Below are positions 50,995 through 64,000 of a stretch of DNA of 64,000 nt, in pieces (within the stretch, counting starts at the first letter, position 1; every line of letters starts with the position of its first letter). This DNA is from Octopus sinensis. Its lineage: Eukaryota. A program made the position numbers and the translations under genes. The stretch spans positions 1-64,000 of the forward strand of contig NW_021832861.1 in NCBI RefSeq assembly GCF_006345805.1. Reading direction: 5' to 3'. Under the pieces are notes generated by a model. That model had not been told where the DNA came from. It did no database searches and was given only the letters and a program-made list of their open reading frames with translations.

Positions 50995-53155
50995 CTGATT
51001 CGCATATATGATAAGGAAAGCGGGCACCTCCATTCTATGAGGTGTCACGCAGGTAAATGCGATGGCAGTGCATTTAGAGCACCTGCCCCTAGTCCGGCTC
51101 TAGTCTCCTTTGATTGTGACCACTGCAGCCGTTCTTTTTTGACGGCCGTAGGTCGATCGCAGCACATTCAACATAATCATCCTGTAGTGGCAAATGCCCG
51201 CAGGATTGCTGCTCGCTTAAAGCAAATTGCGAAAAAACGTGCCGATCGGGCAGCCGCTGCTGAGGCAATAGGCCAAAGACGCAGGGGCTGTTGGTCCGAC
51301 GAAGAAGTAGCGGTCCTCGTTGAAAAGGAGTCTGAGCTGAAGATGATAGGGGTAAAGCAGATCAATGCAGGCATTGCACGGTTCCTACCGGGAAAAACAG
51401 CCAAACAGGTAGGATCGAAAAGGGCTGACCTGGCCAAAAGGGTTCATAAGAGTCATCAAGGGTCAGAGCAGTCCGCGACCAATACCCAATCACAAATCGG
51501 GGGAGAACCCCAGTCTAGTTTTGACTGGAAGGATCGCTTCCTCAATGCTGCATGTCCCAGGCATACCCGCTGGTCTGCAGTCTTCTCCGAGGCCCTTTTG
51601 GAACTCGTGGAAGATGGGACAGCGATTGTTTGGGACTCATTTGAGAAAACTATAGAGGACTGGGTGGAGCACTATGAATCGCGTAGGGAAGTTACCAACA
51701 ACAGGAGAAATTTAGCTAGTGATAGAAACACACCGAATACGTGTAACTTTAGGCCTAGGCGTCGGGATAATCGTCAAGCTTATGCCCGACATCAAGATTT
51801 ATTCAGAAAGAATAGGAAGAAGCTCCTTGCAGTTGTTAGGTGAAAACAGGGAGCAGGAATGCCCTATTCCAATCTATTCAATAGAGGAATTCTATAAGAG
51901 CAGGCTTTCCGCTCCAGGCCCTGGGGTGGATCTGAAGAACTACCCTTCCTCCTCCCAGGTTGAGAACGACTCCATTTTGAGTCCGTTATCCGTGGAGGAG
52001 ATTAAGGTAAGTAGGAAGCAAATGAAGATCTCCTCAGCGGCGGGTCCAGATGGCATCACTATAGGTGAAATCAAAGCAATGGACCCAGCTGTTCTAACTA
52101 ATATATGCAACTGCATGTTGCTGGCGGGTAAAGTACCCGAGATCCTGAAGCGGGGGAAGTCGATTCTATTACCCAAGAAATCAGACGACTCATACGATCT
52201 TGCTAATTGTCGGCCAATCACGATATGTTCTGCGGTATATCGTTTATTTTCAAAGATGGTCGCCAAACGCATGCTTCAGGTAACTCCCCTAAATCAAAGT
52301 CAACGTGGCTTTATTCGCGCGGACGGCTGCAGTGAGAACTCTTTTCTCCTACGACAACTCGTCACTCGCGCGATGGGGAGGCCAGCACGACTGAGAATAC
52401 CGCGGCTGGAGGTTGCCTTCTTAGATCTCTCCAAGGCCTTCGACACAGTCTCGCACTCGTTGGTGTATGCGGGACTGCGGAGACTTGGGTTCCACGAACA
52501 CATAATAGCGCTCGTGGAGGGGATCTACGAAGGTAACACTACCAGATTCTCAGTCGATGGGCAACTGAGTTCACCTATTGAGATTCGTCGAGGTGTTAGG
52601 CAGGGGGACGCGCTCTCGCCGATCCTCTTTAACATTGCAACTGACCCACTGCTAGATGTGTTATCCGGCTGTGGGGATTTGCAGGTTGACGGGATCCGGA
52701 TGGATGGAATCGCGTACGCCGACGACATGGCCCTAGTTGCGAAATCGCGTGAGGGGCTCCAGGCTCTTATGGATAGATGCCTGGAGTTCTATAGCGCGGT
52801 TGGACTGGGGCTTAATGTCGTGGTGTGCGTGATTCTCCATTCGCGGCTCAGGCAAGTCCTACCTCGTCAATGATAGCACCCCGCCGATGATTAATGGGAT
52901 CACTATCAAAAAGGTAGAACCAGGGGATAAGGTATTATATCTTGGTGTTAGCATCCCTACGTGGACTTCAATCTCTAGTCGGGAGTTTGACTTAAATTCA
53001 GTGGAGCAGGTGTCACTGGACATTGATAAAATGTGCAGGGCTCCGCTGAAACCCCGACAAAAATTCCTCTTGCTTCAAAGTTATTACCTGCCTAGACTTT
53101 TTTACAGTCTGGTGCAGTCTTTGCCGTCAAGGGGGATATTAGAGAAGCTTGACAC
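50995..53155 (+). mobile_element. R2: R2 array unit 1 (5'-truncated within ZF2, 3'-truncated after RT)
   Basis: ORF pieces 50698-51843, 51719-52873, 52887-53155. Confidence 0.95.
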
Positions 53156-56100
53156 CGCTGGCCGTGCCTTAGTTTCCCTATTTGGTCTTTAATGACCCGG
53201 TTAGCTTGCTGTTATTTTTGATCAGTTGGTGGGCGGTTCTCCTCTCAAAGGGATGAAGGTCATGGCTCTATGGAGCCAATTAATAGTTGTCTGGTGCAGA
53301 TAGGGGCCGGGGGTTTTGTTGGTTATATGGATCGCCAGTTTTTCCCGTGCCGGTGTCGAGGGGCCTGTGAGTTAGGTACCCAGTTGCGGTGTTAGGGAAT
53401 AGAGCCCTTCACGGGCTGTAGATGGGGGACTGTCCGGCTCGTATAGTCGGGCTGTAGCCTCGTAGCAGTGTAGAGTGAAGGCCCTCTCGTTTGCTTCCAT
53501 TATGGGGGTGAATGCCATAGAGATGGGCGCCTTATTGGTGTTAATGTTCTAGCCGGTTGTTGTGACGGGTGGGATATAGCCGTATCTTCTATATTAGCCT
53601 AGAGCGTGTTTTATCGCCTCATTCGCCGGTTGAGGTTTCCGTAATTGGATATATCGTAGGACTTATCATAAGGTGGCTCTTTCTTGTTCACCGCTTTAGG
53701 TCTGGGGTAGATACACTCACGGGTCCCGTCTAGCCTAGACTGGTCCCCCGGATATCTTCTGGGGGAATTAGTTCTCGGAGGGGTGGCTACTTGCTTTCTG
53801 TCTCTTGATTCGGTTGGGCGGCCGTTAGGATTCTTTGGTTAGGTTAGTGGCGTAGCTTGCCGATCTTGGTGGGGTTGGCGTTGCACTTCCTTTAAGTTCA
53901 ACTTTATCGTTTCGCGGCTAGGTTCCCTAGTAAAATGCCGCCAAGAATAGTGATGTCTAACAATAATTTTAGAAACACACGGCAGCCAGGCGCCGCCAAA
54001 CTGGTGGCCTGTGAGTCCGGGATGGGGCCCCACGTCAGGCCGACCGCACAAACCAAATGCGGTTGGCCGAAAGACTACCCTCCCTTGCACGGGACAACGA
54101 GTCATCTCCGGTGCGAGTAAGTACAAGTGGCTCATTAGGCTTCAACATGACCAGTGTCGGGCGCTCTTTTTTGCGTCCGACACTGAAGTACTATAGAAAT
54201 AGGAAAGACATATTTAGTTTAAAATATAGAGAACATTCCCTGATAGTAAGAGGAGAACAACTCCCACTGGACCTAGCACATGACCCCATCGATGAAGTCC
54301 GGTTTTCGTTAGAGACGGACAGAGAGGGCGATGCTAGGGACCTCCCCAACCATTCTCTTTATTTAGAAATGGATCGAGAGGAGGAAGTGGGGGTATCAAG
54401 CCCCACTCCAGGTGGTAGAGAATTCCCTGCGCGTCTTGCTCCATAGCCTGTCCGCTATGTCCTCTTCGCTTCTCCTCCCACCATGAATGGGGGGAGCATG
54501 TTATTTGTAGACATGGTATTAGGCCTGTCTACAGATGCATTAAGTGTGATAGGGAAAGCGGTCACCTCCATTCCATGAGGTGTCACGCAAGTAAATGCGA
54601 TGGCAGTGCATTTAGAGCACCTGCCCCCAGTCCGGCTCTAGCCTCCTTTGATTGTGACCACTGTAGCCGTTCTTTTTTGACGGCTATAGGTCGATCACAG
54701 CACGTTCGGCATAAGCATCCTGTTGTGGCGAATGCCCGCAGGATTGCTGCTCGCCTTGAAGAAATAGCAAAGAAACGTGCCGATCGGGCAGCCGCTGCTG
54801 AGGCAATAGGCCAAAGACGCAGGGGCTGTTGGTCCGACGAAGAAGTAGCGGTCCTCGTCGAAAAGGAGTTTGAACTGATGAAGACAGGGGTTAAGCAAAT
54901 CAATGCAGCCATTGCACGATTCCTACCTGGTAAAACAGCTAAACAGGTGGGGTCGAAAAGGGCGGTTCTGGCCAAAAGGGCTCACAAGAGTCATCAAGGG
55001 TCAGAACAGTCCACTACCACTACCAATTCCCAATCACAAATCGGGGGAGAACCCCAGTCTAGTTCTGACTGGAGGGATCTCTTCCCCGGTTCTGCATGCC
55101 CCGGGCACACCCGCTGGTCTGCAGTCTTCTCCGAGGCCCTGTTGGAACTCGTGGAAGACGGGACAGCGATTGCTTGGGCTCATTTGAGAATGCTATAGAG
55201 GACTGGGTGGAGCACTATAAATCGCGTAGGGAAGTTACCAACAACAGGAGAAATTTAGCTAGAGATAGAAATATACCAAACACGAGTAACTTTAGGCCTA
55301 GGCGTCGGGATAAGCGTCAAGCTTATGCCCGACATCAGGATTTATTTAGGAAAATAGGAAGAAGCTCCTTGCAGTTGTGTTAGGTGAAAACAGGGAGCGG
55401 GAATACCCTATTCCAATCTATGCTATAGAGGAATTTTACAAGGGCAGGCTTTCCGCTCCAGGACCTGAGGTAGATCTGAAGAACTACCCTTCCTCCTCCC
55501 AGGTTGAGAACGACTATCTTGAGTCCATTCTCCGTGGAGGAGATTAAGGTAAGTAGGAAGACAAATGAAGATCTCCTCAGTGGCAGGTCCAGATGGTATC
55601 ACAATAGGTGAAATCAAAGCAATGGACCCAGCTGTTTTAACCAATATATGCAACTGCATGTTGCTGGCGGGTAAAGTGCCCGAGATCCTGAAGCGAGGGA
55701 AGTCGATTTTGAGACCGAAGAAATCAGACGACCCATACGATCTTGCTAATTGTCGGCCAATCACGATATGTTCTGCGGTATATCGTTTATTTTCAAAGAT
55801 GGTCGCCAAACGCATGCTTCAGGTAACTCCCCTAAATCAAAGTCAACGTGGCTTTATTTGCGCGGACGGATGTAGTGTGAACTCTTTTCTCCTACGACAA
55901 CTCGTCACTCGCGCGATGGGGAGACCAGCACGACTGAGAATACCGCGGCTGGAGGTTGCCTTCTTAGATCTCTCCAAGGCTTTCGACAGTGTCTCGCACT
56001 CTCTTGTGTATGCGGGACTGCGGAGGCTTGGATTCCACGAACACGTTTTAGTGCTCGTGGAGGGGATTTACGAAGTTAGTACTACCAGATTCTCAGTCGA

Positions 56101-56700
56101 TGGGCAGTTAAGCGAACCTATTGAGATTCGTCAAGGTGTTAGACAGGGGGACGCGCTCTCGCCGATCCTCTTTAACATTGCAACGGACCCACTGCTAGAT
56201 GTGTTATCCTGCCGTGAGGACTTGCTTGTTGAGGGGATCCGGATGGATGGAATCGCGTACGCGGACGACATGGCCCTAGTTGCGAAATCGCGCGAGGTGC
56301 TCCAGGCTCTTATGGATAGATGCCAGGAGTTCTATTGTGCTGTTGGAATGGGGCTTAATGTCGGTAAGTGTGCGTGGTTCTCCATTCGCGGCTGGGGCAA
56401 GTCCTACCTCGTCAATGATGGCACCCCGCCGATGATTAATGGGATCGCTATCAAAAAGGTAGAGCCGGGAGATAAGGTATCATATCTTGGTGTTAGCATC
56501 CCTACGTGGACTTCAATCTCTAGTCGGGAGTTTGACTTAAATTCAGTGGAGCAGGTGTCACTGGACATTGATAAAATGTGCAGGGCTCCGCTGAAACCCC
56601 GACAAAAATTCCTCTTGCTTCAAAGTTATTACCTGCCTAGACTTTTTTACAGTCTGGTGCAGTCTTTGCCGTCAAGGGGGATATTAGAGAAGCTTGACAC
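53156..56700 (+). mobile_element. R2: R2 array unit 2 (partial 5' UTR to thumb, 3'-truncated at the same junction as unit 1)
   Basis: Junction GCTTGACAC|CGCTGGCCGTGCC identical at 53156 and 56701; period 3545 bp. Confidence 0.95.
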
Positions 56701-59700
56701 CGCTGGCCGTGCCTTAGTTTCCCTATTTGGTCTTTAATGACCCGGTTAGCTTGCTGTTATTTTTGATCAGTTGGTGGGCGGTTCTCCTCTCAAAGGGATG
56801 AAGGTCATGGCTCTATGGAGCCAATTAATAGTTGTCTGGTGCAGATAGGGGCCGGGGGTTTTGGTTGGTTCAGTTATATGGATCGCCAGTTTTTCCCGTG
56901 CCGGTGTCGAGGGGCCTGTGAGTTAGGTACCCAGTTGCGGTGTTAGGGAATAGAGCCCTTCACGGGCTGTAGATGGGGGACTGTCCGGCTCGTATAGTCG
57001 GGCTGTAGCCTCGTAGCAGTGTAGAGTGAAGGCCCTCTCGTTTGCTTCCATTATGGGGGTGAATGCCATAGAGATGGGCGCCTTATTGGTGTTAATGTTC
57101 TAGCCGGTTGTTGTGACGGGTGGGATATAGCCGTATCTTCTATATTAGCCTAGAGCGTGTTTTATCGCCTCATTCGCCGGTTGAGGTTTCCGTAATTGGA
57201 TATATCGTAGGACTTATCATAAGGTGGCTCTTTCTTGTTCACCGCTTTAGGTCTGGGGTAGATACACTCACGGGTCCCGTCTAGCCTAGACTGGTCCCCC
57301 GGATATCTTCTGGGGGAATTAGTTCTCGGAGGGGTGGCTACTTGCTTTCTGTCTCTTGATTCGGTTGGGCGGCCGTTAGGATTCTTTGGTTAGGTTAGTG
57401 GCGTAGCTTGCCGATCTTGGTGGGGTTGGCGTTGCACTTCCTTTAAGTTCAACTTTATCGTTTCGGCTAGGTTCCCTAGTAAAATGCCGCCAAGAATAGT
57501 GATGTCTAACAATAATTTTAGAAACACACGGCAGCCAGGCGCCGCCAAACTGGTGGCCTGTGAGTCCGGGATGGGGCCCACACGTCAGGCCGACCGCACA
57601 AACCAAATGCGGTTGGCCGAAAGACTACCCTCCCTTGCACGGGACAACGAGTCATCTCCGGTGCGAGTAAGTACAAGTGGCTCATTAGGCTTCAACATGA
57701 CCAGTGTCGGGCGCTCTTTTTTGCGTCCGACACTGAAGTACTATAGAAATAGGAAAGGTATATTTAGTTTAAAATATAGTGATCATTCCCTGATAGTGAG
57801 AGGAGACCAACTCCCTCAGGACCTGGCACATGACCCCATCGATGAAGTCCGGTTTTCATTAGAGACGGACAGAGAGGGCGATGGTAGGGACCTCCTCAAC
57901 CATTCTCTTTATTTAGAAATGGATCGAGAGGAGGAAGTGGGGGTATCAAACCCCACTCCTAGTGGTAGAGAATTCCCTGCGCGTCTTGCTCCATAGCCTG
58001 CCCGCTATGTCCTCTGCGCTTCTCCTCCCCCCAGGATTGGGGAGAACATGTTATCTGTGGACATGGTATTAGGCCTGTCTACAGATGCATTAAGTGTGAT
58101 AGGGAAAGCGGTCACCTCCATTCCATGAGGTGTCACGCAAGTAAATGCGATGGCAGTGCATTTAGAGCACCTGCCCCCAGTCCGGCTCTAGCCTCCTTTG
58201 ATTGTGACCACTGTAGCCGTTCTTTTTTGACGGCTATAGGTCGATCACAGCACGTTCGGCATAAGCATCCTGTTGTGGCGAATGCCCGCAGGATTGCTGC
58301 TCGCCTTGAAGAAATAGCAAAGAAACGTGCAGATCGGGCAGCCGCTGCTGAGGCAATTGGCCAAAGACGCAGGGGCTGTTGGTCCGACGAAGAAGTAGCG
58401 GTCCTCGTTGAAAAGGAGTCTGAGCTGAAGATGACAGGGGTAAAGCAGATCAATGCAGGCATTGCACGATTCCTACCTGGTAAAACAGCTAAACAGGTGG
58501 GGTCGAAAAGGGCGGTTCTGGCCAAAAGGGCTCACAAGAGTCATCAAGGGTCAGAACAGTCCACTACCACTACCAATTCCCAATCACAAATCGGGGGAGA
58601 ACCCCAGTCTAGTTCTGACTGGAGGGATCTCTTCCCCGTTCTGCATGCCCGCCCCGGGCACACCCGCTGGTCTGCAGTCTTCTCCGAGGCCCTGTTGGAA
58701 CTCGTGGAAGACGGGACAGCGATTGCTTGGGCTCATTTGAGAATGCTATAGAGGACTGGGTGGAGCACTATAAATCGCGTAGGGAAGTTACCAACAACAG
58801 GAGAAATTTAGCTAGAGATAGAAATATACCAAACACGAGTAACTTTAGGCCTAGGCGTCGGGATAAGCGTCAAGCTTATGCCCGACATCAGGATTTATTT
58901 AGGAAAAATAGGAAGAAGCTCCTTGCAGTTGTGTTAGGTGAAAACAGGGAGCGGGAATACCCTATTCCAATCTATGCTATAGAGGAATTTTACAAGGGCA
59001 GGCTTTCCGCTCCAGGACCTGAGGTAGATCTGAAGAACTACCCTTCCTCCTCCCAGGTTGAGAACGACTATCTTGAGTCCATTCTCCGTGGAGGAGATTA
59101 AGGTAAGTAGGAAGACAAATGAAGATCTCCTCAGTGGCGGGTCCAGATGGTATCACAATAGGTGAAATCAAAGCAATGGACCCAGCTGTTTTAACCAATA
59201 TATGCAACTGCATGTTGCTGGCGGGTAAAGTGCCCGAGATCCTGAAGCGAGGAAGTCGATTTTGAGACCGAAGAAATCAGACGACCCATACGATCTTGCT
59301 AATTGTCGGCCAATCACGATATGTTCTGCGGTATATCGTTTATTTTCAAAGATGGTCGCCAAACGCATGCTTCAGGTAACTCCCCTAAATCAAAGTCAAC
59401 GTGGCTTTATTTGCGCGGACGGATGTAGTGTGAACTCTTTTCTCCTACGACAACTCGTCACTCGCGCGATGGGGAGACCAGCACGACTGAGAATACCGCG
59501 GCTGGAGGTTGCCTTCTTAGATCTCTCCAAGGCTTTCGACAGTGTCTCGCACTCTCTTGTGTATGCGGGACTGCGGAGGCTTGGATTCCACGAACACGTT
59601 TTAGTGCTCGTGGAGGGGATTTACGAAGTTAGTACTACCAGATTCTCAGTCGATGGGCAGTTAAGCGAACCTATTGAGATTCGTCAAGGTGTTAGACAGG

Positions 59701-61348
59701 GGGACGCGCTCTCGCCGCCGATCCTCTTTAACATTGCAACGGACCCACTGCTAGATGTGTTATCCTGCCGTGAGGACTTGCTTGTTGAGGGGATCCGGAT
59801 GGATGGAATCGCGTACGCGGACGACATGGCCCTAGTTGCGAAATCGCGCGAGGTGCTCCAGGCTCTTATGGATAGATGCCAGGAGTTCTATTGTGCTGTT
59901 GGAATGGGGCTTAATGTCGGTAAGTGTGCGTGGTTCTCCATTCGCGGCTGGGGCAAGTCCTACCTCGTCAATGATGGCACCCCGCCGATGATTAATGGGA
60001 TCGCTATCAAAAAGGTAGAGCCGGGAGATAAGGTATCATATCTTGGTGTTAGCATCCCTACGTGGACTTCAATCTCTAGTCGGGAGTTTGACTTAAATTC
60101 AGTGGAGCAGGTGTCACTGGACATTGATAAAATGTGCAGGGCTCCGCTGAAACCCCGACAAAAGTTCCTCTTGCTGCAGAGCTATTACCTGCCCAGACTG
60201 TTCTATGGTCTGGTGCAGGCTTTGCCGGCGAGAGGGACGTTAGAGATGCTTGACACGGCCATCCGCGTGGGGGCCAAGAGGATGCTACATCTTCCCTACT
60301 CTACCTCTTCTTCCTTCCTATATAGCAGCCGGCGAGATGGAGGATTAAGTCTTCACCAATTCGTGAAGCTAATACCAAAATCAGTTATTTGCCGTAACCT
60401 TCGCCTATTAACGTCTGATTATGTCTGTTAGAAAGGTTGCGGATTCTGCAGGATTAGCCGAACAGAACCAACAACTGATAGTTTCCTTCGACTTGCCGTT
60501 ACTTCCTGCGGACGCGGCCAAATACGACCCTGACATCCGGCTGGCGCACTCCCATCGATGGGCGGCCCAGCCGGTGCAGGGAATGTGTGCGGCGGCCTAC
60601 CGTGGGGATGTGATTGGCAATATTTGGATAAGTAGGCCGGGTAGGATAACGGAGAGATGCTTCTTGAGTTTACCCAAGATGCGCTCTAACGTCTATCCTA
60701 CCCGTGAAACTCTGACACGTGGACTCCGTGGTGACTCAACGTGTCCGAGATGTAGATTAGGAGCAGAGACAATATCTCACGTCAGTGGAGTCTGCGGTGC
60801 TCTTAAAGGGCCACGACTTGCCAGGCATAACAAAATTTGTGACCTGGTGGCAAAGGAAGCTGTAGACCATGGTTGAAGTGTCAGTATAGAGCCGTCTTAT
60901 ATTATAAACGGCTCTAGGCTGATACCTGACCTGGTCTTTAGTCGTCCGGAAAAGGTGGTTGTCGTTGATGTGACTATCAGATTGGAGCAGGGGGACGCCT
61001 TGAAAGAGGTTGCCCTCGAGAAAATGCGCAAATACCGTCCACTTGAACAATTGCTGTTGCAGGAGTTTAACTGGCCGGTAGAGGTGCATGGACTCCCAAT
61101 CGGTGCGTGTGGTGCCTACCAGCGAGTCTTGCACTAGATGCCTTGGGCATAAAAGATGAGTCATTTCAACGACTTCTCAGCCGGACTTCTTTAATTTATA
61201 CCTATAATATGTTGAGGGATTAGCCCTCACATAATAAGCCTATTTCCTCACCGACCCCAGCATAACAACCCTTCAGTGAAGTCCAAAGTTTTTTTTTTTT
61301 TTTTTTGGGACTGAGAGGTGGGTTTGTTGGGGACCCTGCAGTGTGTTT

Positions 61349-61391
<43 letters not shown>

Positions 61392-61668
61392 ACTTTACTG
61401 CGAGGGGTAGCTGGGCGGGTAAAGCCTAGCTTCGGTGAGGTTGAGTCCTACCTTGAAAACACTTTCTTAAGTAAAGAAATAAAAATGACTCTAAGCCCGG
61501 CCTATTGAAGGGAGAATTTTGAACTTTAGTTTACATACTAACACTTTGTTATTTGTTTCTTTTTTCGTCACTATTCTCTTTTAAAAATGGGGGAAACGGG
61601 ATACTGGCTACCGAGACAGTGGGACCACCCACTATAATAATAGGGAAGCCTCCGAAGAGGAGATTAGA
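56701..61668 (+). mobile_element. R2: R2 array unit 3 (partial 5' UTR to complete 3' end, disrupted ORF)
   Basis: 3 ZF, Myb, RT, CCHC, RLE; 3' UTR collinear with 37540-37903 ending ..ATTAGA, not followed by 28S. Confidence 0.96.
57969..58751 (+). CDS. R2 N-terminal DNA-binding region: CCHH, CCHC, CCHH zinc fingers and Myb (frame open 156 nt upstream of the first ATG)
   Basis: Manual translation: RIPCASCSIACPLCPLRFSSPQDWGEHVICGHGIRPVYRCIKCDRESGHLHSMRCHASKC..FDCDHCSRSFLTAIGRSQHVRHKH..GCWSDEE; same at 54419 and, on minus, near 41095. Confidence 0.88.
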   Translation, partial: RIPCASCSIACPLCPLRFSSPQDWGEHVICGHGIRPVYRCIKCDRESGHLHSMRCHASKCDGSAFRAPAPSPALASFDCDHCSRSFLTAIGRSQHVRHKHPVVANARRIAARLEEIAKKRADRAAAAEAIGQRRRGCWSDEEVAVLVEKESELKMTGVKQINAGIARFLPGKTAKQVGSKRAVLAKRAHKSHQGSEQSTTTTNSQSQIGGEPQSSSDWRDLFPVLHARPGHTRWSAVFSEALLELVEDGTAIAWAHLRML

Positions 61669-63352
61669 AGAGAAGAGAAGAAGTGGGGGCTTGATGGTTA
61701 TGACTCACGAACCTTGCAATGGTGGGTGTTCTCACAGCTCTTCCGCTTGGGGTGAACCTGATAACACTCGATTGGGTTGATTTGTCCCTTCCCCGAGAAA
61801 CCCGAGTTTCGTTGGGGGCAGAAAGGCTTTAGTCGGAGGGGCACCTGCGGTGTCCTATAGGAACACCGGTGTGGATGGTGTACAGGGGGATACCCACCTG
61901 CAGTGTTGGCAGCGAGGCGAGAGGGTGGAGAGAGGGTGGATGCACCATCAAGTCTGTCTGGTATGTTATGATCTGCCGGGCTTCACCCGGCAGATGGATG
62001 CACTGCCAGGCTTCACCCACAGGGACACTACCTTGTCGTGGTTTAAGAGCTTACGTCTGTGGGTGGGACGCAAGCCGTTATTGGCCTTTGCGGGCACCAA
62101 CCCATCCGCGGACTAACTAAATGTGTCCTTTCCCCATAGCGGTTCCAATTAATTGGTGGGGACCAAGCAGTGTGGAGGATTATCGTGTGCAGAGTGGGAT
62201 GATACCCTGCTGGTTGGTCGTGGCTGCGCTTGTCGGCCTCCTGCTCATCCGGGTCGGCCACTACCTGGCTTCGGTGTGGTGTGAAGGTCCCCCATTTCTA
62301 TATAAAGAATTTCACGGGGCGGAGCCCATGGACGGCTAAGGTCAGAACGGCTGGGTTCGCTCTCCGGATTGGGCTGCTGACGGGGCGAGGTGGGGATGGG
62401 GTGCTTCCATCCTGCCTCTTATCTCGCCCAAAAGTTAGCGCCTCGTGAAGGTTGCTGTCCCTGCTGTCCCTGGGTGGCTCACGACATTGTCTCCTGACGC
62501 CAGATTGTTGTGGCTCACACATGTTATTGTGGGAGTGGACTCACTTTTGGCCTCATTACGGGAGCCAGTCAACTGACGGGTAAACCGTCAGTATTGAGCC
62601 CTTCGCGGACTGTTGCGGGGTATTTGGCTTGGTATGCGGATTTCGGTTGGCCAGGAAGGATGTTGGCTTACGGTCTGCAGGGTTTGACTCCATACTCTGG
62701 TACTCTTGATTTTCTTCCACGTACTCTTGGAAAATGCCGCGAAGTCCAATTCCTTAACGAAAAGTTATGAAACACACGGTTGCCAGGGGCCGTATAAGAT
62801 GGTGGCTTGTGGGCAAAAGAGCGGGGCTCCAAGCCAGGCCGAGCGTGTTGCCCAACCACGTTGGGTCGATATCAACGCTTCCTGCAGTTGTATAGAGCCA
62901 TTTACACTGCAGGTAATACCAATGGCTCACATACCTAACTTGACCCTGAGGGTTTCTATCGGATCCTGCACATAAAACCCCCTCGATGAAGTCTTCATAA
63001 TTTTTTTTTTTTTTTTTTTTTCGAGGACCGAGAGGCTGGTGTGTAGGATGCCCCTCAAGAAAATTTTTTTTTTTTTTGAGGAGGTGGCATGGTTTGGGGG
63101 CCGTGCCTCGATAGTTGCTTAAAATTAAAATATAAGGAAAATTAAAATAACTCGGATTGGACTTTCAGCTTCTTCTGCCTATCGAAGAAGCACCCGCTTC
63201 GCTGTTAGTTTTAGATCCCCACTACTTAGGTAGATTTTTTTTTTTTTTGTACTTTTATTTCTTTTAAGATTAACGCAAGCTGGGAATTGGCTGGATAGTG
63301 TGGGACCACCCACGTTAAATAAAGGGAAGGAGACTATTTAGTCTCATTTAGA
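61669..63352 (+). mobile_element. ORF-less R2 derivative (5' leader with ribozyme + 3' UTR), SIDE-like
   Basis: 61935-62180 matches the R2 leader at 63398-63690; 62970-63352 matches the R2 3' UTR (GTGAAGTC/T-tract, GTGGGACCACCCAC, ATTTAGA); no RT-like ORF between. Confidence 0.7.
62023..62128 (+). ncRNA. HDV-like self-cleaving ribozyme core (P2-P3-L3-P1'-P4-J4/2-P2')
   Basis: GGACAC / ACC-TTGTCGT-GGT / TTAAGAG / 13-bp P4 / CTAA / GTGTCC. Confidence 0.75.
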
Positions 63353-64000
63353 GGCCTGTTTCCTCTCTTGTGGGGTCTGTTTCTTATGACCTCTTTTGAG
63401 GTGGATGCATTAACAGGTAGGCCTGGTATGTTATGACCTGTCGGGATTCAGTGGGCTTTGCTCACTGTTTTTTACTCGGCAGGTGGATGCACTGCCAGGT
63501 GGATGCACTGCCAGGCTTCGCCCTTTTGGACACTACCTTGGCGTGGTAAGAGAGCTTACGTCCATGCGGGGTCGATGCCGGATATGCTTTACGCAATGCC
63601 GGATAAAAACCCCGTATTGGACAAACTAAACGTGTTCTTTCTCCAAAACGGTTCCAATTTAATTTGGTGGGGAGCTAGTGGATTTTGGGCGATTCTGATA
63701 GGGGGGTGCATGTCTCCCTACTAGTTAGGCTGAGCGGCCGCTGGCCGAACCCTTAGAGTCTTTTTGGTCTTTAGTGACCCGGTTAGCGCTACTGTTTGTG
63801 TGAGTCGGTTAGTGGGCGGTTCTCCCTTCGGGGACAAGAAAGTAAAGGTCGTGGCTTTATTTTAGAGCCAATGAATTGTAGACTTAGGCGTATAGAGGCC
63901 GGAGATTCTGGTTGGTTCATCGGTGTGGATCGCCTGTTTTTCCTGTGCTGGCGTGGAGGGGCCTGTGAGTTAGGTACCCAGCTGCGGTGTTAAGGAATAG
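63353..64000 (+). mobile_element. R2: 5' leader/UTR of a further R2 copy running off the window edge
   Basis: 63739-64000 is homologous to 53156-53410, the sequence preceding the R2 ORF in units 2 and 3. Confidence 0.85.
63528..63637 (+). ncRNA. HDV-like ribozyme core, second copy
   Basis: GGACAC / ACC-TTGGCGT-GGT / AAGAGAG / 12-bp P4 with compensatory changes / CTAA / GTGTTC. Confidence 0.75.

What the first reader, a model, noticed from the sequence alone, without database searches (positions are those of the whole stretch)
61669..63352. Candidate non-autonomous R2 parasite (SIDE-like, ~1.7 kb)
Seen: the unit keeps the ribozyme-bearing leader and the 3' UTR with its terminal hairpin but has no RT or endonuclease coding trace; it is clearly diverged from its neighbours while the structural elements are preserved. 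Established: short internally deleted elements that use R2 machinery are described in Drosophila. Inference: an independently propagating R2-dependent element in a mollusc.
Basis: partly seen in the sequence, partly recalled or inferred. Interest (0 to 1): 0.75.

Follow-up and report, generated by a model that had tools for sequence, protein, structure and literature searches.

The report
ORF-less R2 parasite (SIDE) family copy
The 1.7-kb unit is an old copy of a short, protein-less element that keeps only the two RNA ends of the R2 retrotransposon and has repeatedly inserted at R2's site in the 28S rRNA gene; such R2 parasites were found described only in Drosophila in the papers searched.

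Summary
Window 61669-63352 starts right after an R2 3' end and stops right before the next R2 5' end. It has no RT or endonuclease trace.

It is collinear only with R2 untranslated regions: R2 5' UTR 48-395 and 1157-1380, and 3' UTR 4924-5231. The genome holds 18 near-full-length copies of 1.65-2.0 kb. The middle segment occurs only in these copies and a few fragments of them.

Ten copies end exactly at the 28S R2 site (|TAGCCAAATGCC). Their 5' junctions vary, as target-primed reverse transcription produces. The copy tree is ladder-like, which fits one evolving lineage sampled over time.

The leader carries an HDV-like ribozyme core at 62023-62128. Its P1 partner is a 28S-derived heptamer about 350 nt upstream, and the two sides changed together between subfamilies. 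The 3' end keeps the hairpin module shared by all R2 lineages here.

The window copy itself is a dead member. It lacks the P1 5' strand and lies in a decayed head-to-tail R2/SIDE array outside intact rDNA.

Self-cleavage, transcription and present activity are not shown, and the host taxon is not checked. Other first-reader notes on this same stretch describe the array and the ribozyme.

The parts
61353..61668 (+). 3' UTR end of the upstream R2 copy (body 57575-61668); context, not part of the unit
   Evidence: Aligns to the 28S-inserted R2 at 37556-37838 (76.6%) and ends ...ATTAGA.
61669..61683 (+). 15-nt AG-rich junction filler. It sits where full-length copies carry the 28S-derived leader CTCTTAAG; only the last AAG matches.
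   Evidence: no 7-mer complementary to TTAAGAG lies upstream in this copy.
61684..62022 (+). 5' leader, equivalent to the long J1/2 loop of the ribozyme. It starts with TGGGGGCTTGATGG, the shared 5' end of the family.
   Evidence: Same start in 13 copies. 61935-62235 aligns to R2 5' UTR 48-395 at 68-80%.
62023..62128 (+). HDV-like ribozyme core: P2 62023-62028/62123-62128, P3 62030-62032/62040-62042, L3 62033-62039, P1 3' strand 62043-62049 (TTAAGAG), outer P4 62055-62059/62109-62113, and an invariant C at 62117 in J4/2 (candidate catalytic C).
   Evidence: Alignment A1 of 27 leaders: 96.8% of cells paired against 21-46% when the partners are slid. P1 compensatory change. Most conserved 60-nt bin of the family, 0.91. 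No Rfam HDV-like family reaches E<=10 here.
62129..62969 (+). Central non-coding region. 62711-62929 is homologous to R2 5' UTR 1157-1380, just upstream of the ORF. The rest is specific to the family.
   Evidence: profile E 1.9e-18; found only in copies and fragments of the short element.
62970..63352 (+). R2-type 3' UTR: T-rich tracts, then hairpin GTGGGACCACCCAC (63300-63313), GGGAAG (63324-63329), terminal hairpin 63330-63345 and tail ATTTAGA (63346-63352).
   Evidence: Aligns to R2 3' UTR 4924-5231. The hairpin's closing pair covaries as AU/UA/CG/UG. A terminal hairpin is predicted in 17 of 18 sequences, with lineage-specific stems.
63353..64000 (+). 5' end of the next, full-length R2 copy (runs to contig position 68603); context
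   Evidence: 5251 nt, ORF about 1415-4885 broken by stops. Its own ribozyme core is at 63528-63640, with P1 3' strand AAGAGAG and an upstream CTCTCTT.

Best explanation
The unit is one old, inactive copy of a non-autonomous, R2-dependent retrotransposon family of the SIDE type (short internally deleted element). The family consists of an R2 5' UTR with its ribozyme and an R2 3' UTR. The whole ORF (R2 positions about 1381-4920) is missing.

Inferred life cycle:
1. A copy sitting in a 28S gene is transcribed as part of the rRNA precursor.
2. The HDV-like ribozyme pairs its P1 3' strand (TTAAGAG or GTAAGAG) with the heptamer CTCTTAA or CTCTTAC at 28S positions -9 to -3. It cuts just 5' of that heptamer, across a J1/2 loop of about 350 nt. 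The RNA therefore starts with 8 nt of 28S-like sequence.
3. R2 protein supplied by an autonomous R2 binds the shared 3' module: GUGGGACCRCCCAC hairpin, AGGGAA, terminal hairpin and short tail.
4. The protein nicks the 28S site and copies the RNA by target-primed reverse transcription. This gives a precise 3' junction and a variable 5' junction.

Shown here: the anatomy, the target site, the junction pattern, the subfamily succession, and the compensatory change in P1 and in the 3' hairpin. Inferred: self-cleavage, trans-mobilisation and transcription.

The window copy lies head-to-tail between two R2 copies with no 28S between them. It lacks the P1 5' strand and carries about 4% private changes.
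For: Family size and ends: 59 matches; 18 copies; subfamilies at 93-100% and 92-97% identity within; the middle segment occurs only in these copies and their fragments.

Target site: one search shows ...TTTAGA|TAGCCAAATGCC or ...ACAG|TAGCC in 10 copies, and 28S ...CTCTTAAG|TGGGGCTTG upstream in L015 and L017. In one search, 5 of the 10 insertion-type exact 28S 3' junctions in the assembly are this element. 28S lies on both sides in L017, and with different upstream 28S deletions in L016 and L012.

Collinearity with R2 UTRs only. No ORF.

Ribozyme. In one search, P1 is 7/7 bp in L002, L015 and L017 (CTCTTAA with TTAAGAG) and in L005, L006 and L007 (CTCTTAC with GTAAGAG). That is a change on both sides between strands 348-360 nt apart. 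In L006 and L002 the heptamer is present although the sequence upstream is not 28S, so it travels with the RNA. Long J1/2 loops (216-498 nt) and a P1 built from 28S are documented for silkmoth R2 (PMC3774820).

3' module.

Ladder-like tree, with terminal branches falling from 0.067 to 0.0085.

Possible helpers: two R2 copies with uninterrupted 1155- and 1311-aa frames carry the same 3' core and end at 28S.

Public runs: contigs labelled with at least three organisms hold pieces at 0-few differences, and one shows a 28S junction.
Against: No biochemical test of self-cleavage was possible. Rfam HDV-like models give no hit, and P1.1 is not evident.

P2 and P3 are almost invariant within this clade, so their support is conservation rather than covariation.

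Some copy number comes from DNA duplication. L008-L011 are essentially identical (terminal branches <=0.0025) with identical flanks. L002, L004, L005 and L007 share one variant 28S flank.

The R2 lineages closest to the element (C9332/C3 for the leader, C2 for the 3' UTR) are only seen as broken copies.

The youngest copies still differ by 3-4%, and the rDNA array is not assembled: only one exact uninserted site was found. Present activity is therefore unknown.

Only assembled contigs of runs were available, and their RNA label is a guess.
Confidence: 0.85

Rival explanations
1. One internally deleted R2 insertion arose once and was multiplied only at the DNA level, by unequal crossing-over in rDNA and segmental duplication of rDNA scraps. 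No retrotransposition of the short form took place. [quoted passage not shown]
For: L008-L011 are essentially identical (terminal branches <=0.0025) with identical flanks. L002, L004, L005 and L007 share the same variant 28S downstream flank. The precedent is PMC4370867.
Against: There are at least six different 5' junction classes beside a precise 3' junction, and 5'-truncated copies at different points (L003, L018, L008-11). The tree is ladder-like with graded terminal branches. A compensatory change maintains P1. Copies lie on 9 chromosome-scale scaffolds and 3 small contigs.
Confidence: 0.08
2. Concerning this copy only: the head-to-tail array R2-short-R2-short-short-28S remnant was made in a single TPRT event. 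[quoted passage not shown] On this reading the window unit was never an insertion of its own.
For: There is no 28S between units. The R2/short junction at contig position 68603 carries TAG(C), which could be 28S sequence on the 3' end of an R2 co-transcript. R2 template jumps are documented in vitro and in vivo (PMC3414825, section 'In vivo template jumps').
Against: The three short copies in the array belong to successive rungs of the family tree. Their terminal branches fall from the 3'-most to the 5'-most copy: 0.067, 0.053, 0.043. That fits successive insertions upstream of older ones better than one event. With three copies, the order has a 1 in 6 chance of arising by accident.
Confidence: 0.3
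3. The unit is a full-length R2 whose ORF has decayed beyond recognition, or an unrelated insertion caught between two R2 ends.
For: None beyond the mosaic, decayed state of the region.
Against: The unit is 1684 nt against 5251 nt for R2. There is no tblastx or Pfam signal. The same 1.65-2.0-kb structure recurs 18 times with 28S flanks. The middle is partly R2 5' UTR.
Confidence: 0.02

Closest known systems
R2 SIDE of Drosophila willistoni (R2Dwi_SIDE; Eickbush & Eickbush 2012, PMC3414825)
   Same: It sits in the R2 site of 28S. Its 5' end is homologous to the R2 5' UTR with an HDV-like ribozyme, and its 3' end to the R2 3' UTR with conserved structure. Part of the centre has no identity to R2, and there is no ORF. 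5' junction variation is like that of R2. It is about as frequent as R2 among inserted sites.
   Different: The element here is 1.65-2.0 kb against 529 bp and has no poly(A) tail. The ribozyme core is about 350 nt inside the element, with P1 made from 28S-derived sequence and predicted cleavage at -9. In the Drosophila SIDE the ribozyme lies at the element's 5' end. Copies here are 3-20% diverged with a succession of subfamilies, against under 3% in D. willistoni. Self-cleavage was shown for the fly element and not here.
Silkmoth and other arthropod R2 ribozymes that cleave upstream in 28S (Eickbush, Burke & Eickbush 2013, PMC3774820)
   Same: The P1 5' strand is supplied by 28S sequence. The J1/2 loop is very long (216-498 nt in silkmoths, about 350 nt here). 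The RNA keeps 28S nucleotides at its 5' end.
   Different: The predicted cleavage position is -9 rather than -28, -29 or -13. A long P4 is present here and absent in silkmoths. In one subfamily the carried 28S-like heptamer has itself mutated (A to C), with a compensating change in the core.
Degenerate R2 (R2Br-deg) of Bacillus rossius (PMC4370867)
   Same: A non-coding-competent R2 derivative persists in 28S alongside a functional R2.
   Different: R2Br-deg is full-length, has lost ribozyme activity, shows no 5' deletions, and is thought to multiply by unequal recombination. The element here is internally deleted, keeps the ribozyme pairings and shows varied 5' junctions.
Other SIDE-type partners of non-LTR elements, such as Persaeus/CR1-Zenon in Lepidoptera (PMC6740152)
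   Same: A short internally deleted derivative that relies on its parent's machinery.
   Different: That element is not site-specific and has no ribozyme-defined 5' end.

Membership tests
[quoted passage not shown] | Inserted at the R2 target site of the 28S rRNA gene | tested here: met
   Ten copies end |TAGCCAAATGCC, and canonical 28S lies upstream in L015 and L017. Rfam LSU matches span the insertion in L017, L016 and L012. The window copy itself is flanked by R2 copies, not 28S.
[quoted passage not shown] | 5' end homologous to the R2 5' UTR, including the ribozyme | tested here: met
   Unit 267-567 aligns to R2 48-395 at 68-80%, with profile E 4e-42. The core has the same P2/P3/L3/P4 layout as the neighbouring R2.
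[quoted passage not shown] | 3' end homologous to the R2 3' UTR and folding like it | tested here: met
   Unit 1302-1661 aligns to R2 4924-5228. The hairpin, AGGGAA, terminal hairpin and tail are shared with six R2 lineages, with covarying pairs.
[quoted passage not shown] | No reverse transcriptase or endonuclease ORF | tested here: met
[quoted passage not shown] | Precise 3' junction with variable 5' junctions (28S deletions, truncations, extra nucleotides), as expected of TPRT | tested here: met
   at least six 5' junction classes.
[quoted passage not shown] | An autonomous R2 in the same genome that can supply the protein | tested here: inconclusive
   Two R2 copies have open frames of 1155 and 1311 aa without stops, and they carry the same 3' core at 28S junctions. 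They belong to a lineage about 60% identical in protein to the R2 beside the unit. The closest lineages are seen only as broken copies.
[quoted passage not shown] | Evidence of recent or current propagation (near-identical copies, polymorphism) | tested here: inconclusive
   The youngest copies are 96-97% alike, with terminal branches of 0.0085-0.021. The rDNA is not assembled. Contigs of public runs hold pieces with 0 differences, at summed contig depths of about 300 in one run of unknown kind.
HDV-like self-cleaving ribozyme, R2 type | Nested double pseudoknot in the order P1-P2-P3-L3-P3'-P1'-P4-J4/2-P2' | tested here: met
   The order and pairings are present. P2 is 6 bp, P3 3 bp with a 7-nt L3, P1 7 bp and P4 long. 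A compact version lies at the 28S junction of another R2 lineage (L050, L057).
HDV-like self-cleaving ribozyme, R2 type | Covariation supporting the helices | tested here: met
   P1 shows CTCTTAA/TTAAGAG, CTCTTAC/GTAAGAG and CTCTCTT/AAGAGAG. In P4, one pair shows CG, UG and UA and the adjacent pair GU, GC and AU; P2 has one AU for GC. By eye, P2 and P3 differ entirely but still pair in the compact lineage. Support for P2 and P3 within the clade is mostly conservation.
HDV-like self-cleaving ribozyme, R2 type | P1.1 and a catalytic C in J4/2 | tested here: inconclusive
   An invariant C lies in J4/2 (window 62117). No clear 2-bp P1.1 can be drawn between L3 (UUGUCGU) and the nucleotides after P1.
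HDV-like self-cleaving ribozyme, R2 type | Match to curated covariance models | tested here: not met
   No HDV-like Rfam family reaches E<=10 on 61200-64000 or on the compact junction L050. These models cannot bridge a 350-nt J1/2, so the negative result is weak.
HDV-like self-cleaving ribozyme, R2 type | Self-cleavage | not testable with these tools
   This needs an in vitro co-transcription/cleavage assay or mapping of RNA 5' ends. Only contigs of runs were available.

The most novel reading that the evidence does not exclude
R2 and its short parasite can insert at the 5' junction of an element that already occupies the site, recognising mainly the upstream 28S half-site. Head-to-tail arrays without intervening 28S would then grow stepwise, youngest unit first. 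On this reading the parasite is the commoner occupant of rDNA in several related species, and its 28S-derived P1 strand evolves as part of the element.
Probability: 0.2. Interest if true: 0.65.

Novelty: new member of a known kind. Interest (0 to 1): 0.5.

Why it matters
In the open literature I could search, R2 SIDEs are reported only from Drosophila. A 2026 review of R2 diversity does not mention non-autonomous R2 at all. R2 itself is known in molluscs (PMC5035012).

A long-lived, subfamily-forming SIDE in a distant animal lineage would show that parasitism of R2 needs only the ribozyme leader and the 3' protein-binding module, and that it can persist through much sequence turnover.

The family also offers a natural experiment. 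It gives a compensatory pair in P1 across a 350-nt loop, and a minimal conserved 3' module shared by six R2 lineages. Both point to the RNA elements the R2 protein and ribozyme actually need, which is of use to those engineering R2-based insertion systems.

Tried and rejected
- Rfam at gathering and at E<=10 gave no ribozyme or R2 RNA family on the unit or on a compact R2 junction. Multi-source Rfam calls failed with a tool error.
- tblastx and Pfam on the unit's open frames found nothing. A recurrent 100-140-aa frame over the ribozyme region was considered as a small ORF. It was rejected because 1-nt indels and G-run length changes shift it between near-identical copies.
- I looked for an intact autonomous R2 at the 28S junctions present in the assembly. 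All five examined are broken. Intact frames exist only in another lineage.
- Expression: no listed holder is on record as RNA, and only contigs were available. There is therefore no RNA 5' end, strand or level. Pieces in two runs guessed to be RNA are not evidence of transcription.
- Uninserted 28S sites cannot be counted from the assembly: only one exact site is present.
A profile HMM was used only for searching.

Full report
**Setting**

The window is a patchwork of R2 copies and rDNA scraps. A 28S fragment lies at 36690-37403 on the minus strand. It is preceded by an R2 copy whose 3' end meets 28S exactly at the canonical R2 site...GAGAATTTAGA|TAGCCAAATGCCTCGTCATC. RT-bearing frames lie at 37904-39796(-), 51719-52873, 55565-56737 and 59262-60431. 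On the plus strand an R2 body runs 57575-61668.

**The unit**

The unit of the finding follows at 61669-63352, and a further R2 starts at 63353. Fetching the contig beyond the window showed the full arrangement: R2 (57575-61668), short unit a (61669-63352), full-length R2 (63353-68603), short unit b (68610-70231), short unit c (70240-71842), then a degenerate 28S downstream sequence. No 28S lies between the units.

**What the unit is made of**

The comparison R2 is the 5251-nt neighbour, whose frame runs from about 1415 to 4885 and is broken by stops. Against it the unit is collinear only with untranslated regions:
- unit 267-567 with R2 48-395
- unit 1043-1261 with R2 1157-1380
- unit 1302-1353 with R2 4924-4973
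- unit 1574-1661 with R2 5143-5228

A profile of the family gives the same picture (E 4e-42, 2e-18 and 9e-15). The missing part is therefore the whole ORF, with about 35 nt to spare at each side.

tblastx gives nothing outside these nucleotide-level matches. The six longest frames have no Pfam match. No ORF is conserved among copies.

**Is it a family?**

The whole unit finds 18 near-full-length copies on 12 contigs, plus fragments. The internal 486 nt finds only those copies, with 20 candidates, all scored.

Identity defines two main groups. One group of about 1665 bp comprises L005-L011 at 93-100%. The other, of 1760-1830 bp with a 115-bp internal duplication, comprises L012 and L015-L018 at 92-97%. 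The window copy and L013 are close to the second group (89-92%). There are intermediates (L002-L004) and one old copy (L024, 72-79%).

The maximum-likelihood tree is a ladder: L004, L003, L002, L013, window copy, L012, then the youngest four. Terminal branches fall from 0.067 to 0.0085. This is the pattern expected when successive insertions sample one evolving lineage.

**Where the copies sit**

Ten copies end exactly at |TAGCCAAATGCC. Of the ten exact 28S downstream half-sites in the assembly that are preceded by something other than 28S, five are this element and five are R2 copies, including the one in the window.

Upstream junctions differ among copies:
- canonical ...CTCTTAAG|TGGGGCTTG in L015 and L017
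- ...CTCTTACG|TGGGG in L005 and L007
- a 5'-truncated form joined to 28S in L008-L011
- two different large deletions of upstream 28S in L012 and L016, where 28S still lies on both sides
- non-28S sequence in L013 and L018

A precise 3' junction with varied 5' junctions is the signature reported for R2 and for the Drosophila SIDE (PMC3414825).

Part of the copy number is DNA duplication. L008-L011 are essentially identical (terminal branches <=0.0025) with identical flanks. L002, L004, L005 and L007 share one variant 28S flank.

**The ribozyme**

A lead from another first-reader note (s1-109640) and the 5' junctions of other R2 lineages located the core. Compact R2 junctions read 28S CTCTCTT, a few nucleotides, a P2 strand, GCC-TTGTCGY-GGC, and AAGAGAG. 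That is P1 (28S with AAGAGAG), P3 and L3 of an HDV-like fold. The closing P2 strand follows a conserved GGACTAAC.

The unit has the homologous core at 62023-62128:
- P2: GGACAC / GTGTCC
- P3: ACC / GGT
- L3: TTGTCGT
- P1 3' strand: TTAAGAG
- a long P4
- an invariant C at 62117

On 27 leaders, 96.8% of cells pair. With the partners slid by 1-3 columns only 21-46% pair. Within this clade P2 and P3 are nearly invariant, so that support is mainly conservation. P4 has real covariation.

The strongest point is P1. Copies with TTAAGAG have CTCTTAA at the 5' junction. Copies with GTAAGAG have CTCTTAC. R2 copies with AAGAGAG have CTCTCTT. Each is 7 of 7 pairs, across 348-360 nt.

In L006 and L002 the heptamer is there although the upstream sequence is not 28S. 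It is therefore part of the transcript that was copied. This implies cleavage 5' of position -9 and an RNA that starts with 8 nt of 28S-like sequence.

Both features, P1 from 28S and J1/2 loops of 216-498 nt, are documented for other R2 elements (PMC3774820).

Some points weaken the case. Rfam HDV-like models do not match. I cannot draw a convincing P1.1. Catalysis is untested. In the window copy the P1 5' strand is replaced by AGAGAAGAGAAGAAG, so this copy could not process itself.

**The 3' end**

All copies and all six R2 lineages seen at 28S junctions share the same series of elements:
- a hairpin GUGGG-ACCR-CCCAC, whose closing pair is AU, UA, CG or UG depending on lineage
- an A-rich stretch and AGGGAA
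- a 4-6-bp terminal hairpin with lineage-specific stems, predicted in 17 of 18 sequences
- a 7-9-nt tail before TAGCC

This is the likely protein-binding module, by analogy with R2 3' UTR recognition (PMC3414825). That role is inferred, not tested.

**Helper**

The R2 copies nearest in sequence are broken. Two copies of another lineage, at C11 53.248 Mb and C18 17.538 Mb, have uninterrupted frames of 1155 and 1311 aa. They have compact ribozymes at 28S 5' junctions (L050, L057) and the same 3' core at 28S 3' junctions. A source of protein therefore plausibly exists, but which lineage serves the parasite is unknown.

**Abundance and spread**

The assembly holds only one exact uninserted R2 site. 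The rDNA arrays are thus essentially unassembled, and true copy numbers are unknown.

Public runs labelled with four organisms hold words of a young copy. Contigs of three organisms were laid on it and match pieces with 0 to a few differences. One contig from another organism continues from the element's 3' end into TAGCCAAA. Summed contig depth in one 3.8-Gb run of unknown kind is in the hundreds.

Two small runs guessed to be RNA hold pieces of the element. This does not show transcription.

**Origin of the array**

Two readings remain open.

The first is successive insertions upstream of older ones. The three short copies lie in age order, youngest 5'-most, by both branching order and terminal branch length. 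With three copies this order has a 1 in 6 chance of arising by accident.

The second is a single event with template jumps between RNAs, which R2 reverse transcriptase is known to make (PMC3414825). The TAG(C) after the R2 3' end at contig position 68603 could be 28S sequence on an R2 co-transcript.

**Comparison and novelty**

The element meets the tested defining features of an R2 SIDE. It differs from the Drosophila examples in size, in the upstream-cleaving long-loop ribozyme, in lacking poly(A), and in its long subfamily history.

In the literature I could search, R2 SIDEs are reported only from Drosophila. R2 itself is known from molluscs (PMC5035012). I could not verify the host taxon.

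I rate it a new member of a known kind, of moderate interest. The window copy itself is a fossil.

Noticed in passing
G000:C11:53248079-53250028 and G000:C18:17537854-17539803 (5' junctions in L050 and L057; 3' ends in L086 and L085): Two R2 copies of a second lineage have uninterrupted 1155- and 1311-aa frames. Each has a compact HDV-like ribozyme directly at the 28S junction and a canonical 3' junction. The C18 copy lies about 7 kb from a short-element copy (L015).
   Followed up: partly
whole assembly: Only one exact uninserted 28S R2 site, and about 25 upstream half-sites, exist in 2.7 Gb. The rDNA arrays are essentially absent from the assembly, and what is seen are dispersed rDNA scraps, many carrying insertions.
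   Followed up: partly
L067-L077, L079 (C1, C6, C7, C18, C20, C22, C6071): The same leader and ribozyme core occurs on many chromosomes with a different P1 3' strand (GAAAGAG). These may be R2-like lineages with another P1 partner, and perhaps another target or no target specificity.
   Followed up: no
window 51009-60259: A tandem duplication with a period of about 3.54 kb (95.8% identity) joins a 3'-truncated R2 body directly to an R2 leader piece. This looks like DNA-level duplication rather than retrotransposition.
   Followed up: no
window 41494-42437 and 44622-45566: A 945-bp inverted repeat at 97% identity lies next to the 5' break of the minus-strand R2 copy.
   Followed up: no
window 30198-30787: A leader piece 85-93% identical to the short element's leader (unit 267-393) abuts sequence 69% identical to the R2 RT region. 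It is either another deletion derivative or a rearrangement.
   Followed up: no
window 46459-47973: Frames with weak Exo_endo_phos and RVT_1 matches suggest an unrelated APE-type LINE fragment.
   Followed up: no
L002, L004 (contig 71843+), L005, L007, downstream flanks: Four short-element copies are followed by the same variant 28S, in which about 36 nt after the R2 site are missing (AAGG then TGAACGGATC...). This is an old rDNA pseudogene block that has been duplicated.
   Followed up: no
run X5 (another organism) laid on L017 at 3298: In a related species the element's 3' tail before TAGCCAAA (TTACGG...CGTAAGTGCTGG) resembles the terminal hairpin and tail of the intact second R2 lineage (L086), not that of this genome's copies. 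This may be a 3'-end exchange that tracks the helper.
   Followed up: no
L050 1535-1560: The 5' end of the compact R2 lineage (GGTTGCTGCCTTGTCGC) aligns to the 28S sequence downstream of the insertion site (GGTAGCCAAATGCCTCGTC). This fits the published idea that R2 5' ends and ribozyme parts derive from target duplications.
   Followed up: no
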